DNA from: Octopus sinensis
Lineage: Eukaryota
Reading direction: 5' to 3'
Assembly (NCBI RefSeq): GCF_006345805.1
Contig: NW_021832351.1
Location: forward strand, 1-50,701
Length of the DNA stretch: 50,701 bases
Shown: positions 5,875 through 40,243 of the stretch, piece after piece
How the letters are laid out: every line of letters starts with the position of its first letter
Numbering within the stretch: the stretch's first letter is position 1
Notes under the pieces: generated by a model
Database searches by the model: none
Told to the model about the DNA's origin: nothing
The model's input: only the letters and a program-made list of their open reading frames with translations
Program-made: the position numbers and the translations under genes

Positions 5875-7375
5875 TTTAAGGCGGCGAGCTGGCAGAAACG
5901 TTAGCACGCAGGGCGAAATGCGTAGCCGTATTTCGTCTGCCGTTACGTTCTGAGTTCAAATTCCACCGAGTTCGACTTTGCCTTTCATTCTTTCGAGGTC
6001 GATTAAGTAAGTATCAGTTACTGAGGTCGATGTAATCCACTTAATCCCTTTGTCTGTCCTTGTTTGTTCTCCTCTGTGTTTAGCCCCTTGTGGATAGTAA
6101 AGAAATAGGTATTTCGTCTGCCGTTACGTTCTGAGTTCAAATCCGCCGCCGAGGTCGACTTTACCTTTCATCTTTCGAGGTCGATTAAATAAGTATCAGT
6201 TACTGAGGTCGATGTAATCGACTTAATCCCTTTGTCTGTCCTTGTTGTTCTCCTCTGTGTTTAGCCCCTTGTGGATAGTAAAGAAATAGGTATTTCGTCT
6301 GCCGTTACGTTCTGAGTTCAAATTCCGCCGAGGTCGACTTTACCTTTCATCCTTTCGAGGTCGATTAAATAAGTATCAGTTACTGAGGTCGATGTAATCG
6401 ACTTAATCCCTTTGTCTGTCCTTGTTTGTTCTCCTCTGTGTTTAGCCCCTTGTGGATAGTAAAGAAATAGGTATTTCGTCTGCCGTTACGTTCTGAGTTC
6501 AAATTCCGCCGAGGTCGACTTTACCTTTCATCCTTTCGAGGTCGATTAAATAAGTATCAGTTACTGAGGTTGATGTAATCGACTTAATCCCTTTGTCTGT
6601 CCTTGTTTGTTCTCCTCTGTGTTTAGCCCCTGTGGATAGTAAGAAATAGGTATTTCGTCTGCCGTTACGTTCTGAGTTCAAATTCCGCCGAGGTCGACTT
6701 TACCTTTCATCCTTTCGAGGTCGATTAAATAAGTATCAGTTACTGAGGTCGATGTAATCGACTTAATCCCTTTGTCTGTCCTTGTTTGTTCTCCTCTGTG
6801 TTTAGCCCCTTGTGGATAGTAAAGAAATAGGTATTTCGTCTGCCGTTACGTTCTGAGTTCAAATTCCGCCGAGGTCGACTTTACCTTTCATCCTTTCGAG
6901 GTCGATTAAATAAGTATCAGTTACTGAGGTCGATGTAATCGACTTAATCCCTTTGTCTGTCCTTGTTTGTTCTCCTCTGTGTTTAGCCCCTTGTGGATAG
7001 TAAAGAAATAGGTATTTCGTCTGCCGTTACGTTCTGAGTTCAAATTCCGCCGAGGTCGACTTTACCTTTCATCCTTTCGAGGTCGATTAAATAAGTATCA
7101 GTTACTGAGGTCGATGTAATCGACTTAATCCCTTTGTCTGTCCTTGTTTGTTCTCCTCTGTGTTTAGCCCCTTGTGGATAGTAAAGAAATAGGTATTTCG
7201 TCTGCCGTTACGTTCTGAGTTCAAATTCCGCCGAGGTCGACTTTGCCTTTCATCCTTTCGGGGTCGATTAAATAAGTACCAGTCTACGCACTGGGGTCGA
7301 TATAATCGACTTAACCCGTTTGTCTGTCCTTGTTTGTCCCCTCTTTGTTTAGCCCCTTGTGGGTAGTAAAGAAAT
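5875..7375 (+). mobile_element. Family A SINE: one head plus 8 head-to-tail ~181-bp body units, flanked by a 21-bp TSD
   Basis: Units start at 5928, 6109, 6290, 6471, 6650, 6831, 7012 and 7193. AGGTAAATACGATTCGCTTTG occurs at 5854-5874 and 7376-7396. Confidence 0.95.
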
Positions 7376-10449: not shown

Positions 10450-10529
10450 AGGCGCAATATATATTATTTACGTTATATATATATGTGTGTTTGTGTGTGT
10501 GTATGTATATGTATGTATATAAATATATA

Positions 10530-11435
10530 GATGTAGTGGGTCTTGCAAGCATGAAGTGGATTCGATCCACCATAACCAAATTTAAATTAACAGTTCAGCA
10601 GAACTTTTCCCACGGTGGAACAATGGTTTTTTTGTGACAGCAGTTTTACATTTGTCAGATTGCCCTTAGGCCGAAATCATGACTTCGCCATTTGACCCTT
10701 ATAACCTCTTCTATTTCAGCAAAAGCTAGAATAGAGATCGCAAAACCACCAACTAAATCTATTGTTCTCAATGATATGACTATCCTTCTGGATAGTTATA
10801 AAATCATAAACCCCAAGCAAATAGTTAGTTCAGTCACATGGTGACGACTCAACCAGTTCAGTCACCTCGGTGACAACTCAGTGAGAACGAAATCTGGCTG
10901 ACCCGTTAGAACCTTGGTCAGACGGAGAAATGAAGTTTACTGTCAGCAACTGTGAGGCAACACCCTACAACTCTCACTAGCTCTAATTCTGTTCTCTTAC
11001 ATCATTTTCTCTCCGCATATACTACTAAACAATGCAGAGAACACTAGCACAAACTTTACTTCGCATGCTTTTGCTTTTGGATTTATTATTACCTGCTCGT
11101 CGAGGCAAGGTATTGTAACGTAACGATAAATAAATACTTCCTTAGAACTTCATGCATTGTTCATCTTTCACATCCTACAACTTGTCGTTTTAAAAACAAA
11201 TTTTTATCGTTACAACTGTTGACTCTAACATTTCATATTCTTGTGTACCTAATCAATCTCACCCGTTACAATTGGTAACTACACTAATTAAAACCTAACT
11301 CTTACAAGTGGTGACCCTCGACTTCAACTTAAAACTCTACCGTTACAAACTGGCGATCCGGACGTTGCACTATAACAAGGTTCGCTACAAAAACAAATCT
11401 TTCATCGCTTACAACTGGTAACCTCAACCGTTACA
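10530..11435 (+). mobile_element. Gypsy/Ty3 LTR retrotransposon 3' fragment (possibly CsRn1-like): decayed pol tail, PPT remnant, 3' LTR
   Basis: Decayed frame ...LRHL...RTKSG*PVR resembles the RRHL/TRSGR pol C-terminal tail. Purine tract GAGGCAAGG precedes the LTR. tRNA-Trp PBS-like motifs are typical of the CsRn1 clade. Confidence 0.6.
11114..11435 (+). repeat. LTR (322 bp) with TGTAACG...CGTTACA termini and internal PBS-like array
   Basis: 7-bp terminal inverted repeat TG...CA; AATAAA-like signal at ~11127; five TTACA-n(2-3)-TG(G/T) motifs inside. Confidence 0.7.
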
Positions 11436-11463
11436 TACATAATATATATATATATGTGTGTGT

Positions 11464-11500
<37 letters not shown>

Positions 11501-11645
11501 GCGTGCGTGTGTGTATATGTATATATATATATATATATAATATATATATAGATATGTATATATATGTATATATATATAGTATATATATATATGTATATAT
11601 ATAAGTATATATATATATATATGTATATATATATGTATACATGCA

Positions 11646-11677
<32 letters not shown>

Positions 11678-11684
11678 CACACAC

Positions 11685-11816
11685 CCACTCCTGCGCCTCA
11701 ACACACCCACTCCTGCGGCTCCACACAGCCACTCCTGTGTCCCCACACAGGCACTCCTCCGCATCCACACACCCACTCCTGTGACTCCACACAGCAACTC
11801 CTGTGCCTCCACACAG
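11685..11816 (-). repeat. 22-bp minisatellite x6 derived from the family C SINE 5' end
   Basis: Unit (rc) AGGCGCAGGAGTGGCTGTGTGG matches the first 22 nt of the SINE at 46304 and (rc) near 21416. Confidence 0.9.
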
Positions 11817-12528
11817 CCATTCTGGCGGTATTATTATTATTATTATTATTGTTATTAGTCTTTTTCTCTTTATTATTATTGCTGCTCTTTCAGTTGTCGT
11901 TGTTGTTGTTGTTGTCGTTCTTGTTGGTTATGTAATGAACTCTGCTGCTGCTGCTGTTGTTGTTGTTGTTGTTGCTGCTGCTATTAATAGAGTCGTATTG
12001 TCATTGTTGTTGAAGTGACGAAATGCTCGTTGAGACGGTGATGGTAGCAATGGGAGGGAGGGAGGGAGGGAGGACCGACAAAGAATAGAATATGTTTGGT
12101 GGTGGTGGTGGTGGTGGTGATGGTGTTAGTGGTCGACGATGGCGTAAGAATTGCGTTCTACTTCCTTCATCACTTTTGCTCTGAAACCTTTCCGCTTTCG
12201 TTCCTCCCTAGAATGGGATCTTGAAAATATCAACTCACAAACAATGCTTCCCTCCATCGACACCATCTCCCGCCCCTCATTTCCTCCACCACTGCAGGCG
12301 TCGCCGTTGCCTCCCACCCCCGCACAACAGCAACCACAGGCTAATGAGGAATTTATTACGTGGTCGTTCATTCTGCTAGAAATAGTAGACAAACCCTCCT
12401 CTCAAATTACAGATTCACTTCTTAGAAAGAAATCTGCTTGTCTCTCGTCTGTCTATTGTCCTCAAGGTTTTGTGTTCGGCATTGGTGGCCAATAAAGAAA
12501 GAACTACCACCACCACCACCACAAACGA

Positions 12529-12700
12529 ATTAAGTCGATTATATCGACCCCAGTGGGTAACTGGTACTTATTTAATCGACCCCGAGAGGGTGAAAGGCAA
12601 AGTCGACCTCGGTGGAATTTGAACTCAGAACGTAACGGCAGACGAAAAACCTCTTAGCATTTCGCCCGGCGCCCTAACGTTTCTGCCAGCTCGCCGCCTT
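12529..12700 (-). mobile_element. Family A SINE, 3'-truncated
   Basis: Reverse complement of head AAGGCGGCGAGCTGGCAGAAACG through the central domain. Confidence 0.9.
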
Positions 12701-13202: not shown

Positions 13203-13274
13203 TCCCATGTAGTCTAGTGGTTAGGATTCCTGGCCTTCACCCAGGCGGCCCGGGTTCGATTTGCGGCATGGGAA
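13203..13274 (+). tRNA. tRNA-Glu(TTC) gene or recent pseudogene
   Basis: Acceptor stem TCCCATG/CATGGGA and anticodon arm CCTGG-CCTTCAC-CCAGG; near-identical to eukaryotic tRNA-Glu. It has U33C and one T-stem mismatch. Confidence 0.8.
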
Positions 13275-13288
13275 CGCGTACTTATTTA

Positions 13289-39384: not shown

Positions 39385-40243
39385 TACGAGGTCTGATCAA
39401 TAAGTATCCGGACTGTTGCCGTACTAACGAGGCTAAAGCACGCAGAGTCAAGCCGCTTGACACAGACTGACCTTGAACACAGCTGTGTACGTGCATTACG
39501 TTTTAACGTTCTAGCTCACTTCCTCTGTTTACAGCAGTATTTGGAAGGAAGGTGTGTAGCGTGTGATCGTCACATTGACCATAACACAGAAATTTGGCGA
39601 TACCTGCTCAGTGACCTTCGCAAAGTTGCAGAAAGTGTATGGAGAGAAGTGTATGAATCACGCACAAGAGTACGAGTGGTTCAGATGTTTTCAAGAGGGC
39701 CTAAAAATGTCGATATTGACGAACGTTCTGGGAGACCCTCAACCAGAGAAACATCGCAGTTGTGCGTGCAAGTGTGAGGGAAAATCGTCGAATAACCATC
39801 AGTGAGTTATCAGATGATCTGCAGACTAGTTACGGTTCATTTCAGTCCATTATCTCTGAAGATTTGGGTATGAAGCGCGTGCCTGCCAAATTTGAGTCAC
39901 AACTGCCTTCAGCTGACCAAAAGTTGCACAAGATCTCTTTGCGTCGAGAACGCTGAAAACAGTTTGAAAACTTTGCATAGGCCTCTGAGCAGGAATCGTC
40001 AAGCTTTTGGCAAAATTTAATGCAGATTCTCTGATCAACTTTCTTTGTCATGGTCAAAGCGACAATCACACACTACACACCTTCCTTCCAAGGCCTACTG
40101 TAAACAGCGAAAGGGAGCTAGAATGTTAAAACTTAGTGCGCATGCACAGCTGTGTTCATGATCTCTGTCAAGCGGCTTGATTCTGTGGCTTTTAGCTTCG
40201 TTACTATACCAACAGTCCGGATACCTTTTGATCAGACCACGTA
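39385..40243. mobile_element. Mariner derivative made of two inverted 5' ends
   Basis: TIR TACGAGGTCTGATCAATAAGTATCCGGACTGTTG at both ends. Transposase N-terminal remnants on both strands (ERSGRPST, ENRRITISELS; KVDQRICIKFC). Confidence 0.85.

What the first reader, a model, noticed from the sequence alone, without database searches (positions are those of the whole stretch)
11114..11435. LTR carrying a serial array of fossil 'LTR-end + tRNA-Trp PBS' units
Seen: inside one TGTAACG...CGTTACA LTR, five motifs of (CG)TTACA + 2-3 nt + PBS-like sequence: TGTTGACTCTAAC (11217), TGGTAACTACAC (11273), TGGTGACCCTCGAC (11309), TGGCGATCCGGACG (11351), TGGTAACCTCAAC (11416). A weaker sixth is at ~11175, and the last relic abuts the true end. 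Known: TGGTGACCCCGACG is complementary to the tRNA-Trp 3' end, the primer of CsRn1-clade Gypsy elements, and a PBS normally occurs once, outside the LTR. Inference: U5 grew by repeated duplication or capture of the att-end+PBS, with each superseded PBS decaying. Alternatively the array provides alternative integrase ends, alternative primers or tRNA-fragment decoy sites. I do not recall this being described.
Basis: partly seen in the sequence, partly recalled or inferred. Interest (0 to 1): 0.85.

Follow-up and report, generated by a model that had tools for sequence, protein, structure and literature searches.

The report
LTR with repeated primer-site modules
A 322-base terminal repeat left by an old Gypsy-type retrotransposon contains five to seven internal copies of its own end joined to a tRNA-Trp primer-site-like sequence; this is unusual and suggests how such repeats can lengthen, but it rests on one decayed copy.

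Summary
All four CGTTACA heptamers in the 50.7-kb window lie in 11114-11435. Five strong and two weak modules of (CG)TTACA + 2-3 nt + TGGTrAC... occur there and nowhere else. Their majority consensus, TTACA-AC-TGGTGACCCCAA, matches 11 of 12 bases of the published CsRn1-clade tRNA-Trp primer-binding site (PBS). A metagenome scan found real elements with CHCC/DUF7041 Gag that carry the intact junction CGTTACA + 1-2 nt + TGGTGACCCCGACGTGA(T).

These relatives support both LTR borders. Position 11114 follows a decayed polypurine tract (PPT; rank 14 of 101,370 on a PWM built from relatives). The last 18 nt match an LTR end of a relative at 16/18. So this is a 3' LTR of a decayed, 5'-truncated CsRn1-like Gypsy element with the array inside it. 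None of seven related LTRs has such an array.

The "fossil PBS" reading is only partly right. The last unit is a U5 box conserved across the clade, not a neutral relic. Three of the four other strong units (u1, u3, u4) keep PBS-type bases at diagnostic positions. If the whole array is U5, little room is left for U3 and R. No second copy, full-length member or host tRNA could be reached, so the mechanism is inferred: serial duplication of the att-end+PBS junction. It is a new variant of a known kind, of moderate interest.

The parts
11102..11113 (+). Decayed polypurine tract GAGGCAAGG plus linker TAT, directly upstream of the LTR start. It marks the LTR as a 3' LTR.
   Evidence: It aligns with the PPT/LTR-start junctions of five relatives. 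A PWM built from those relatives ranks this position 14th of 101,370 in the window.
11114..11435 (+). 322-bp LTR, TGTAACG...CGTTACA, of a decayed CsRn1-like Ty3/Gypsy element.
   Evidence: Borders are supported (5' side; 3' side). The size falls within the 201-398 bp range of related LTRs. There is no second copy in the window and no gag or pol remnant.
11114..11130 (+). LTR 5' terminus TGTAACG[TAACG]ATAAA. It is the inverted partner of 11203-11213 and of the LTR end.
   Evidence: Inverted repeat I1 has 11-nt arms that are 100% complementary. The 7-nt inverted terminal repeat can be read directly from the sequence.
11129..11134 (+). The only AATAAA in the LTR, 15 nt from its start. Its position is odd for a polyadenylation signal if the whole array is U5.
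   Evidence: Read from the sequence. In relatives AATAAA lies 55-90 nt before the LTR end.
11174..11191 (+). Module u0 (weak): CCTACA + AC + TTGTCGTTTT.
   Evidence: Direct repeat D3: 11163-11185 is 78% identical to 11397-11419, the u5 region.
11208..11229 (+). Module u1: CGTTACA + AC + TGTTGACTCTAAC (8/12 to PBS-Trp).
11264..11284 (+). Module u2: CGTTACA + AT + TGGTAACTACAC (7/12).
11301..11322 (+). Module u3: CTTACA + AG + TGGTGACCCTCGAC (9/12 ungapped; 13 matches with one 1-nt insertion).
   Evidence: The spacer is homologous to that of u2 (D6).
11341..11364 (+). Module u4: CGTTACA + AAC + TGGCGATCCGGACG (11/14).
11383..11389 (+). Additional att-like site CGCTACA, inside a block (11382-11402) that is homologous to 11185-11205.
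   Evidence: Direct repeat D4, 81% identity, 197-nt spacing.
11407..11435 (+). Module u5 plus the true LTR end: GCTTACA + AC + TGGTAACCTCAAC + CGTTACA. The last 18 nt, GTAACCTCAACCGTTACA, are the clade-conserved U5 'GTAACC box' plus the att end.
   Evidence: 16/18 identical to the L016 LTR end GTAACCACAAACGTTACA. Also similar to L034 AGTAACCTCACCCACA, L018 TGTAACCACCCGTTACA and L027 GTAACTTCACCTACA.

Best explanation
Segment 11114-11435 is the 3' LTR of an old, 5'-truncated Ty3/Gypsy element of the CsRn1-like group (tRNA-Trp primed, CHCC/DUF7041 Gag). Its U5-proximal two thirds are built from repeated, now diverged copies of the element's own junction module: the last ~15 nt of the LTR (..CTCAnCCGTTACA), a 2-nt spacer, and the first ~13 nt of the tRNA-Trp primer-binding site.

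Shown here:
- the LTR borders;
- the module structure;
- the identity of the module with intact junctions in related elements;
- that seven related LTRs lack such an array.

Inferred mechanism: the junction was duplicated several times in the 5' LTR-leader region of replicating ancestors. The likely cause is template switching or slippage between two short direct repeats that flank the att end in this clade, namely the conserved U5 'GTAACC box' (TGGTAAC..) and the PBS (TGGTGAC..). Whenever priming used the downstream PBS copy, everything upstream became part of U5 by definition and was copied into both LTRs. The LTR therefore lengthened by one unit, and the internalised PBS copies were free to drift. 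Later block duplications inside the LTR added further copies (for example 11185-11228 and 11382-11428). The most terminal PBS-like box is not a relic. It is a conserved U5 element whose function is unknown; candidates are a second integrase half-site or a tRNA contact.
For: - Array reality.
- Consensus: the majority consensus of the units, built without reference to any tRNA, is AACCGTTACAACTGGTGACCCCAA. This matches 11 of 12 bases of the published CsRn1-type PBS TGGTGA(G/C)CCCG(T/A) (PMC2582038). PBS-Trp ranks 23rd of 262,144 and is the best of a 20-tRNA panel.
- Intact junctions: CGTTACA + 1-2 nt + TGGTGACCCCGACGTGA(T/G) occurs in L010, L012, L013 and L016. The match extends 5-6 nt beyond the bases I specified in the search.
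- Clade identity: L012 and L016 encode DUF7041 Gag with the CHCC knuckle.
- 5' border: the PPT+TGT PWM gives rank 14 of 101,370 (alignment).
- 3' border: 16/18 identity to the L016 LTR terminus, and the GTAACC box is shared with L018, L034, L027 and L036.
- Clade architecture: complete relatives have 201-398-bp LTRs, a 4-bp TSD, PPT-TGT and ACA + 1-2 nt + PBS.
- Rarity: the window LTR has four 12-mers at 8/12 or better to the PBS, all preceded by TTACA. Seven related LTRs have 0-2, none preceded by TTACA.
- PBS origin: u1, u3 and u4 carry G at position 5, and u3 and u4 carry G at position 11. These are the PBS states. The box has A at both (read; box sequences).
- Local repeat-proneness in relatives: L018 has a 22-nt x3.1 leader repeat that starts at nt 10 of the PBS. 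L027 has a 13-nt x3.1 repeat over the box. L035 has three GTGATC in the leader.
- From my own knowledge, not checked here: retroviral vectors with two PBSs that initiate at the downstream site yield proviruses whose LTRs include the intervening sequence.
Against: - There is only one decayed copy. No second copy is in the window and no family member was found in any reachable collection.
- It is therefore not shown that the array was present in a replicating element rather than formed in place.
- The modules start about 50 nt after the LTR start. If they are all U5, U3+R would be implausibly short. A motif that sits just after AATAAA in L036 and L027 lies between u1 and u2, which suggests u0 and u1 may lie upstream of R.
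- The last unit is a conserved box, so at least one 'relic' is not a relic.
- Spacers between most units cannot be aligned.
- The local GTTAC/GTrAC hairpins are not thermodynamically significant.
- The host tRNA-Trp is unknown, and the acceptor-stem part of the PBS differs in one relative (Nephila element).
Confidence: 0.5

Rival explanations
1. The array arose at the DNA level by replication slippage or unequal exchange that duplicated the LTR-terminal module (GTAACC box + att end). This could have happened in a master copy or in place after insertion. The true PBS was never involved. The PBS-likeness is simply inherited from the clade-conserved box.
For: - The box is itself PBS-like: it is the PBS with three transitions.
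- It is conserved in several families at the same place.
- The minimal unit, 22 nt at 11414-11435, equals spacer + box + att end.
- This genome region is very prone to micro- and minisatellites.
- Block duplications inside the LTR are evident (D3-D5).
Against: - A 3' LTR is not followed by AC+TGG, so in-place duplication cannot create the TTACA+2 nt+TGG joints unless the unit already lay inside the LTR.
- u1, u3 and u4 carry the PBS-type G5. u3 and u4 also carry CGAC(G), which the box lacks.
- The unit consensus is closer to the PBS (11/12) than the boxes of any relative are (7-8/12, and by hand).
Confidence: 0.27
2. The LTR is short (11114-11214, bounded by the 11-12-nt inverted repeat). The modules downstream lie in the leader of a following element, in a tandem LTR-internal-LTR-internal arrangement. 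That would make them a leader repeat like the one in the L018 family, later truncated by the microsatellite.
For: - Perfect 11-nt inverted repeat between 11120-11130 and 11203-11213.
- Relatives carry PBS-overlapping tandem repeats in the leader.
- The L016 and L018 contigs read pol-LTR-PBS-gag.
Against: - A 101-bp LTR is half the size of the shortest related LTR, which is 201 bp.
- The final 18 nt at 11418-11435 match the LTR terminus of relatives and are followed by non-element DNA.
- No Gag remnant lies downstream or anywhere else in the window.
Confidence: 0.1
3. The segment is not retrotransposon-derived. It would be a degenerate minisatellite, or a DNA transposon or MITE with TGTAACG inverted termini and subterminal binding-site repeats, whose core happens to resemble a PBS.
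For: - The termini are inverted repeats.
- Each core is a near-palindrome (GTTAC-N5-GTrAC).
- No TSD flanks the segment: GTAT on the left, TACA on the right.
- There is no coding partner in the window.
Against: - The PPT+TGT match has rank 14 of 101,370.
- The terminal 18-mer is homologous to LTR ends of CHCC-Gag elements.
- The identical junction occurs with a full 17-18-nt PBS-Trp in real elements.
- All modules are in direct orientation, unlike the subterminal repeats at the two ends of a DNA transposon.
- A missing TSD is expected if only the 3' LTR survives.
Confidence: 0.03

Closest known systems
CsRn1-clade Ty3/Gypsy LTR retrotransposons (CsRn1, PwRn1, AgCR-1 to -14; PMC2582038)
   Same: They share a tRNA-Trp PBS (TGGTGA(G/C)CCCG..), TGT...ACA LTR termini, a G-rich PPT directly before the 3' LTR, and LTRs of a few hundred bp. 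Relatives fetched here with the same CGTTACA/PBS junction have the CHCC Gag knuckle.
   Different: The window holds only a 3' LTR and a PPT, with no gag or pol. The LTR contains 5-7 internal att-end+PBS-like modules. None of the seven related LTRs examined has these, and the paper does not mention them.
Tandem repeats inside LTRs and 5' leaders of LTR elements (for example U3 enhancer repeats of gammaretroviruses and leader repeats of Drosophila gypsy/ZAM-type elements; from my own knowledge)
   Same: These are also short units multiplied inside the non-coding control regions, with copy number evolving by slippage or template switching.
   Different: In the known cases the unit is a transcription-factor or insulator site. 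Here the unit is the integrase end plus the primer-binding site, which are the two cis signals that normally define where the LTR stops.
Leader repeat of the L012/L017/L018 family found here (metagenome and Logan contigs)
   Same: It belongs to the same clade and has the same CGTTACA + T + PBS-Trp junction. Its 22-nt x3.1 tandem repeat (CGACGTGATCGGCAGTGTTACG) begins inside the PBS and contains GTTAC.
   Different: Those repeats lie downstream of the working PBS, in the leader, and copy only its 3' half. In the window the modules lie upstream of the LTR end and copy the 5' half of the PBS plus the att end.
Retroviral vectors with two primer-binding sites (dual-initiation experiments; from my own knowledge, papers not in the searchable library)
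   Same: They show experimentally that initiation at a downstream PBS moves the upstream PBS and the intervening sequence into the LTR. This is the step inferred here.
   Different: The constructs are engineered and carry one extra PBS. A natural serial array has not been described, as far as my searches reach.
U5 elements that flank the PBS and contact the primer or the att end in retroviruses (U5-IR stem, primer activation signal; from my own knowledge)
   Same: Like these, the conserved GTAACC box sits 8-16 nt upstream of the LTR end and resembles or complements neighbouring signals.
   Different: No pairing with a tRNA or with the att end is demonstrated here. The predicted hairpins are not significant.

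Membership tests
LTR of a CsRn1-like (tRNA-Trp primed, CHCC-Gag) Ty3/Gypsy element | TGT...ACA termini with short inverted repeats | tested here: met
   TGTAACG at 11114 and CGTTACA at 11429-11435.
LTR of a CsRn1-like (tRNA-Trp primed, CHCC-Gag) Ty3/Gypsy element | Polypurine tract directly upstream of the 3' LTR | tested here: met
   GAGGCAAGGTAT|TGT scores rank 14 of 101,370 on a PWM built from five relatives.
LTR of a CsRn1-like (tRNA-Trp primed, CHCC-Gag) Ty3/Gypsy element | LTR 3' terminus homologous to that of clade members | tested here: met
   The last 18 nt match L016 at 16/18 (9 of the 11 bases not fixed by my search pattern). The GTAACC box is shared with L018, L034, L027 and L036. 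An unconstrained whole-LTR local alignment is only borderline (p about 0.05).
LTR of a CsRn1-like (tRNA-Trp primed, CHCC-Gag) Ty3/Gypsy element | PBS complementary to the tRNA-Trp 3' end, 1-3 nt after the 5' LTR | tested here: inconclusive
   No 5' LTR or working PBS is present. Only internal PBS-like units exist, and their consensus matches at 11/12. The host tRNA-Trp is not available.
LTR of a CsRn1-like (tRNA-Trp primed, CHCC-Gag) Ty3/Gypsy element | Gag with CHCC knuckle, and pol (RT, RNase H, integrase) | tested here: not met
   tblastn of 107 Gag and Pol proteins of relatives against the window gave nothing below E=0.04. There is no ORF of 120 aa or more nearby. The coding part has been lost, so membership rests on the cis signals only.
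LTR of a CsRn1-like (tRNA-Trp primed, CHCC-Gag) Ty3/Gypsy element | 4-bp target-site duplication | not testable with these tools
   Only the 3' LTR survives, and its partner flank would lie beyond the lost 5' LTR. The 4 nt after the LTR are TACA.
Solo LTR | Identical 4-bp TSD on both sides of the single LTR | tested here: not met
   GTAT on the left and TACA on the right, 0 of 4 matching. A PPT on the left shows that internal element sequence is still attached.
Simple tandem repeat / minisatellite | Head-to-tail copies of one unit with a constant period | tested here: not met
   TRF finds nothing at a minimum score of 30. Spacing of att-like sites is 35, 56, 36, 41, 42, 24 and 22 nt. Only some spacers are homologous.
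DNA transposon / MITE with subterminal repeats | Terminal inverted repeats flanked by a TSD, with binding-site repeats in inverted orientation at the two ends | tested here: not met
   There is no TSD. All modules are in one orientation.

The most novel reading that the evidence does not exclude
In this Gypsy lineage the LTR grows stepwise. The att-end+PBS junction is duplicated, driven by the PBS-like U5 box. Priming then shifts to the downstream copy, and the former junction is swallowed into U5. The retained PBS-like boxes would not be junk. They would work as extra tRNA-Trp or 3'-tRNA-fragment binding sites, acting as primer-loading pads or as decoys against PBS-targeting small RNAs, or as extra integrase half-sites. 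This would be a natural, serial version of the dual-PBS experiment and a new route of LTR evolution.
Probability: 0.2. Interest if true: 0.7.

Novelty: new variant of a known kind. Interest (0 to 1): 0.5.

Why it matters
The att end and the PBS are the two signals that define where an LTR stops. Finding them repeated inside an LTR gives a concrete, testable route by which U5 can lengthen and by which primer sites can be replaced without loss of function at any step.

The comparison also turned up a PBS-like 'GTAACC box' conserved at the U5 end of several diverged CsRn1-like families. PBS-overlapping tandem repeats occur in their leaders as well. Together these suggest that the region around the primer site is a hot spot for duplication in this clade.

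There is a practical consequence. LTR-finding software that anchors on 'CA + PBS' could mis-place LTR ends in such families.

If the array turns out to be a one-off local expansion, it is only a curiosity.

Tried and rejected
1. A second LTR copy or coding remnants in the window: none (blastn; ORFs; tblastn).
2. Rfam: only the tRNA-Glu at the gathering threshold, and nothing meaningful in 10500-11500.
3. Junction scan of viral contigs: 8 hits in contigs without LTRs, judged to be chance.
4. Exact look-up of ten window ORFs in the protein collection: none present. The look-up may have been weakened by alternative start codons.
5. Six-frame pseudo-protein of 10531-11437 searched against 5.8 billion proteins, to catch spurious ORFs over other copies: no hit.
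6. Three-core array pattern scanned in metagenome contigs: 0 hits.
7. Protein search with the L016 Gag alone, to find relatives closer to the window's LTR end: only itself.
8. An alternative left border at 10532 (TGTAGTGGG, TSD TAGA/TACA 3 of 4, resembling the L018 LTR start) was considered. I dropped it in favour of 11114 because of the PPT score.
9. The upstream 28-nt repeats at 10826-10885 were tested as further modules. They do not score on the module PWM.
10. The hairpin idea (GTTAC/GTrAC): single-unit folds are not better than shuffles, and the whole LTR gives only z=-2.3, driven by the 11114/11203 inverted repeat.
11. Reading the minus strand as PPT + U3-start repeats was rejected, because the stretches are not purine-rich.
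12. Host identification by SINE sequence in the literature: no hit.
13. Literature search for natural multi-PBS or PBS-like arrays in LTRs: nothing relevant.

Full report
THE WINDOW

The window is animal DNA. It is extremely rich in micro- and minisatellites and in SINE copies, with no long ORFs. The host is not identified. It contains one tRNA gene, tRNA-Glu.

OBSERVATION

The heptamer CGTTACA occurs four times in 50,701 bases, and all four lie inside 11114-11435. TTACA occurs six times there against 0.58 expected. The 17-mer CGTTACAANTGGTRACC with up to 3 mismatches finds 5 sites in the window, 4 of them here, against 0.74 expected for the whole window.

Direct-repeat analysis shows that homology between units includes about 12 nt upstream of TTACA (..CTCAnCCGTTACA). 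In some pairs it also includes the spacers: u2/u3, and 11185-11228 against 11382-11428. The period varies from 22 to 56 nt, and TRF reports no tandem repeat. Besides the five strong modules there is a weak one at 11174-11191, homologous to the u5 region (D3), and an att-like CGCTACA at 11383-11389.

IS THE UNIT REALLY 'LTR END + tRNA-Trp PBS'?

Taken singly, the 14-mers are not above chance: 2 window hits with up to 3 mismatches against 1.06 expected. The context is what matters. Among 164 TTACA sites on both strands, only the array sites reach 8-9 of 12 matches to the PBS-Trp 12-mer within 0-5 nt, and the background maximum is 7.

The units are copies of one ancestor, so the fair test is the consensus. 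A PWM built from the five cores without reference to any tRNA gives AACCGTTACAACTGGTGACCCCAA. That is TTACA + AC + TGGTGACCCCAA, which matches 11 of 12 bases of the CsRn1-clade PBS published as TGGTGA(G/C)CCCG(T/A) (PMC2582038). On the PWM of the five PBS-like 12-mers, the Trp sequence ranks 23rd of 262,144 possible TGG+9-mers.

The strongest evidence came from a metagenome scan for CGTTACA-N1-3-TGGTGACCCCGA. Four eukaryotic contigs (L010, L012, L013, L016) carry CGTTACA + 1-2 nt + TGGTGACCCCGACGTGA(T/G). Their match to tRNA-Trp runs 5-6 nt beyond what I specified. L012 and L016 encode Gag proteins with a DUF7041 domain and a C-x2-H-x9-C-x3-C knuckle, which is the CHCC signature of the CsRn1 clade. 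So the ancestral unit of the window's array is the real junction of a real lineage.

IS IT AN LTR, AND WHERE ARE ITS BORDERS?

There is no second copy in the window. No gag or pol remnant is detectable with 107 related proteins. The flanks show no TSD: GTAT on the left, TACA on the right.

I used Gag homologues to fetch related elements, reading only their LTR and leader parts. Complete insect and spider copies have 201-398-bp LTRs, a 4-bp TSD, a G-rich PPT followed by TGT, and ACA + 1-2 nt + PBS.

A PWM of the PPT/LTR-start junction from five relatives ranks window position 11114 14th of 101,370 positions. The window has TCGAGGCAAGGTAT|TGTAACG, against for example GACGAGGGGGTAT|TGTGGCG in L031.

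At the other end, the last 18 nt, GTAACCTCAACCGTTACA, are 16/18 identical to the LTR terminus of L016, GTAACCACAAACGTTACA. Nine of the 11 bases not fixed by my search pattern match. They also resemble the termini of L018, L034, L027 and L036.

The PPT shows that this is a 3' LTR whose element has lost its 5' part. That explains both the missing TSD and the absence of a PBS after 11435. The array is thus most probably inside the LTR.

HOW UNUSUAL IS IT?

In seven related LTRs there are 0-2 twelve-mers with 8/12 or better to the element's own PBS, and none is preceded by TTACA. The window's LTR has four, plus one at 7/12, all preceded by TTACA + 2-3 nt. My literature searches found no description of natural arrays of this kind. 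These searches covered only the held library.

WHAT THE RELATIVES CHANGE IN THE INTERPRETATION

1. The last 'relic' (TGGTAACCTCAAC) coincides with a 'GTAACC box' that is conserved 8-16 nt upstream of the LTR end in families whose Gag proteins are only 21-65% identical. It is therefore a selected U5 element, not a decaying fossil. The box equals the PBS with three transitions (G5A, C9T, G11A).

2. Units u1, u3 and u4 carry the PBS state G5. Units u3 and u4 also carry G11 and CGAC(G). This argues that they descend from a true PBS rather than from the box.

3. The PBS neighbourhood is repeat-prone in the clade. L018 has a 22-nt x3.1 leader repeat that starts at nt 10 of its PBS and contains GTTAC. 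L035 has three GTGATC in the leader. L027 has a 13-nt x3.1 repeat over its box.

MECHANISM (INFERRED)

The att end is flanked on both sides by short direct repeats: the box TGGTAAC on the left and the PBS TGGTGAC on the right. Slippage or reverse-transcriptase template switching between them duplicates [box-att end-spacer] and leaves an intact PBS downstream.

More generally, any duplication of att end + PBS followed by priming at the downstream copy moves the upstream copy into U5, and hence into both LTRs. Repetition of this step, plus block duplications inside the LTR (D3-D5), gives the observed patchwork.

PROBLEMS

- The modules begin about 50 nt after the LTR start, and the only AATAAA is at 11129-11134. 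If everything downstream were U5, U3+R would be too short.
- A motif that lies just after AATAAA in L036 and L027 occurs between u1 and u2. So the transcription start may have moved into the expanded region, or some units arose by DNA-level duplication.
- Local hairpins are not significant.
- The host tRNA-Trp is unknown.
- No other copy of this family could be reached.
- In-place expansion and the leader-array alternative therefore cannot be excluded.

VERDICT

The reading 'serial fossil PBSs in a growing U5' is plausible but only partly supported. This is a new structural variant of a known kind of element, of moderate interest. It is decidable by a simple genome-wide search in the host assembly.
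Noticed in passing
window 5883-7266; dispersed copies at about 12520-12640 (-), 13362, 23974, 24191, 33848, 43677, 48872 and 50052: At least seven head-to-tail copies of a 181-nt SINE-like unit. The same SINE tail (..GTTCAAATTCCGCCGAGGTCGACTTTGCCTTTCATCC..) is scattered through the window.
   Followed up: no
window 13203-13275 (+): A tRNA-Glu(TTC) gene or pseudogene (46.8 bits in Rfam) is followed directly by the SINE body. It may be the tRNA-derived head of that SINE family.
   Followed up: no
window about 39397-40100 (+): A stop-free stretch that looks like the N-terminal part of a mariner-type transposase (..RRITISELSDDLQTSYGSFQSII..). I saw this by eye only.
   Followed up: no
window 11436-11819: The LTR is followed by a compound (TACA/TA/TG)n microsatellite and then a 22-nt minisatellite, CACACAGCCACTCCTGCGCCTC x6.5. 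The right flank of the LTR may therefore have been remodelled.
   Followed up: partly
window 10826-10885: Two 28-nt tandem units, AGTTCAGTCAC-N3/4-GGTGACnACTCA (GTCAC/GTGAC inverted arms), lie about 230 nt upstream of the PPT, in what should be the element's 3' internal region. They do not score on the module PWM.
   Followed up: partly
window 11240-11253: CTTGTGTACCTAAT is 13/14 identical to a motif that lies just after AATAAA in the firefly element L036. The Nesidiocoris element L027 has TTGTCTACCT at the same place. This may be an R/U5 landmark sitting between modules u1 and u2.
   Followed up: partly
L018 1514-1583 (also L012, L017); L035 50-125; L027 6849-6885: Relatives carry tandem repeats that touch the primer site. 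L018 has a 22-nt x3.1 leader repeat starting at nt 10 of the PBS. L035 has three GTGATC in the leader. L027 has a 13-nt x3.1 repeat over the U5 box.
   Followed up: partly
L028 6899-6920 (Nephila pilipes element, LTRs 100% identical): Its PBS reads TGGTAACTTAGGACGTGAT. The T-arm part matches tRNA-Trp, but the acceptor-stem part differs from the canonical TGGTGACCCCG. The primer tRNA sequence, or the choice of primer, therefore varies between host taxa.
   Followed up: no
L027 flanks (6691-6700 and 11145-11154): The Nesidiocoris element has the same 10 nt, TCAACAACGG, on both sides instead of a 4-bp TSD. It may have inserted into a repeat, or the locus may be a duplicated one.
   Followed up: no
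L016 1-1060; L018 100-1620: These contigs read pol 3' end - LTR - PBS - gag. This means either tandem elements sharing one LTR or assembly through a collapsed LTR. It limits what they say about LTR ends.
   Followed up: no
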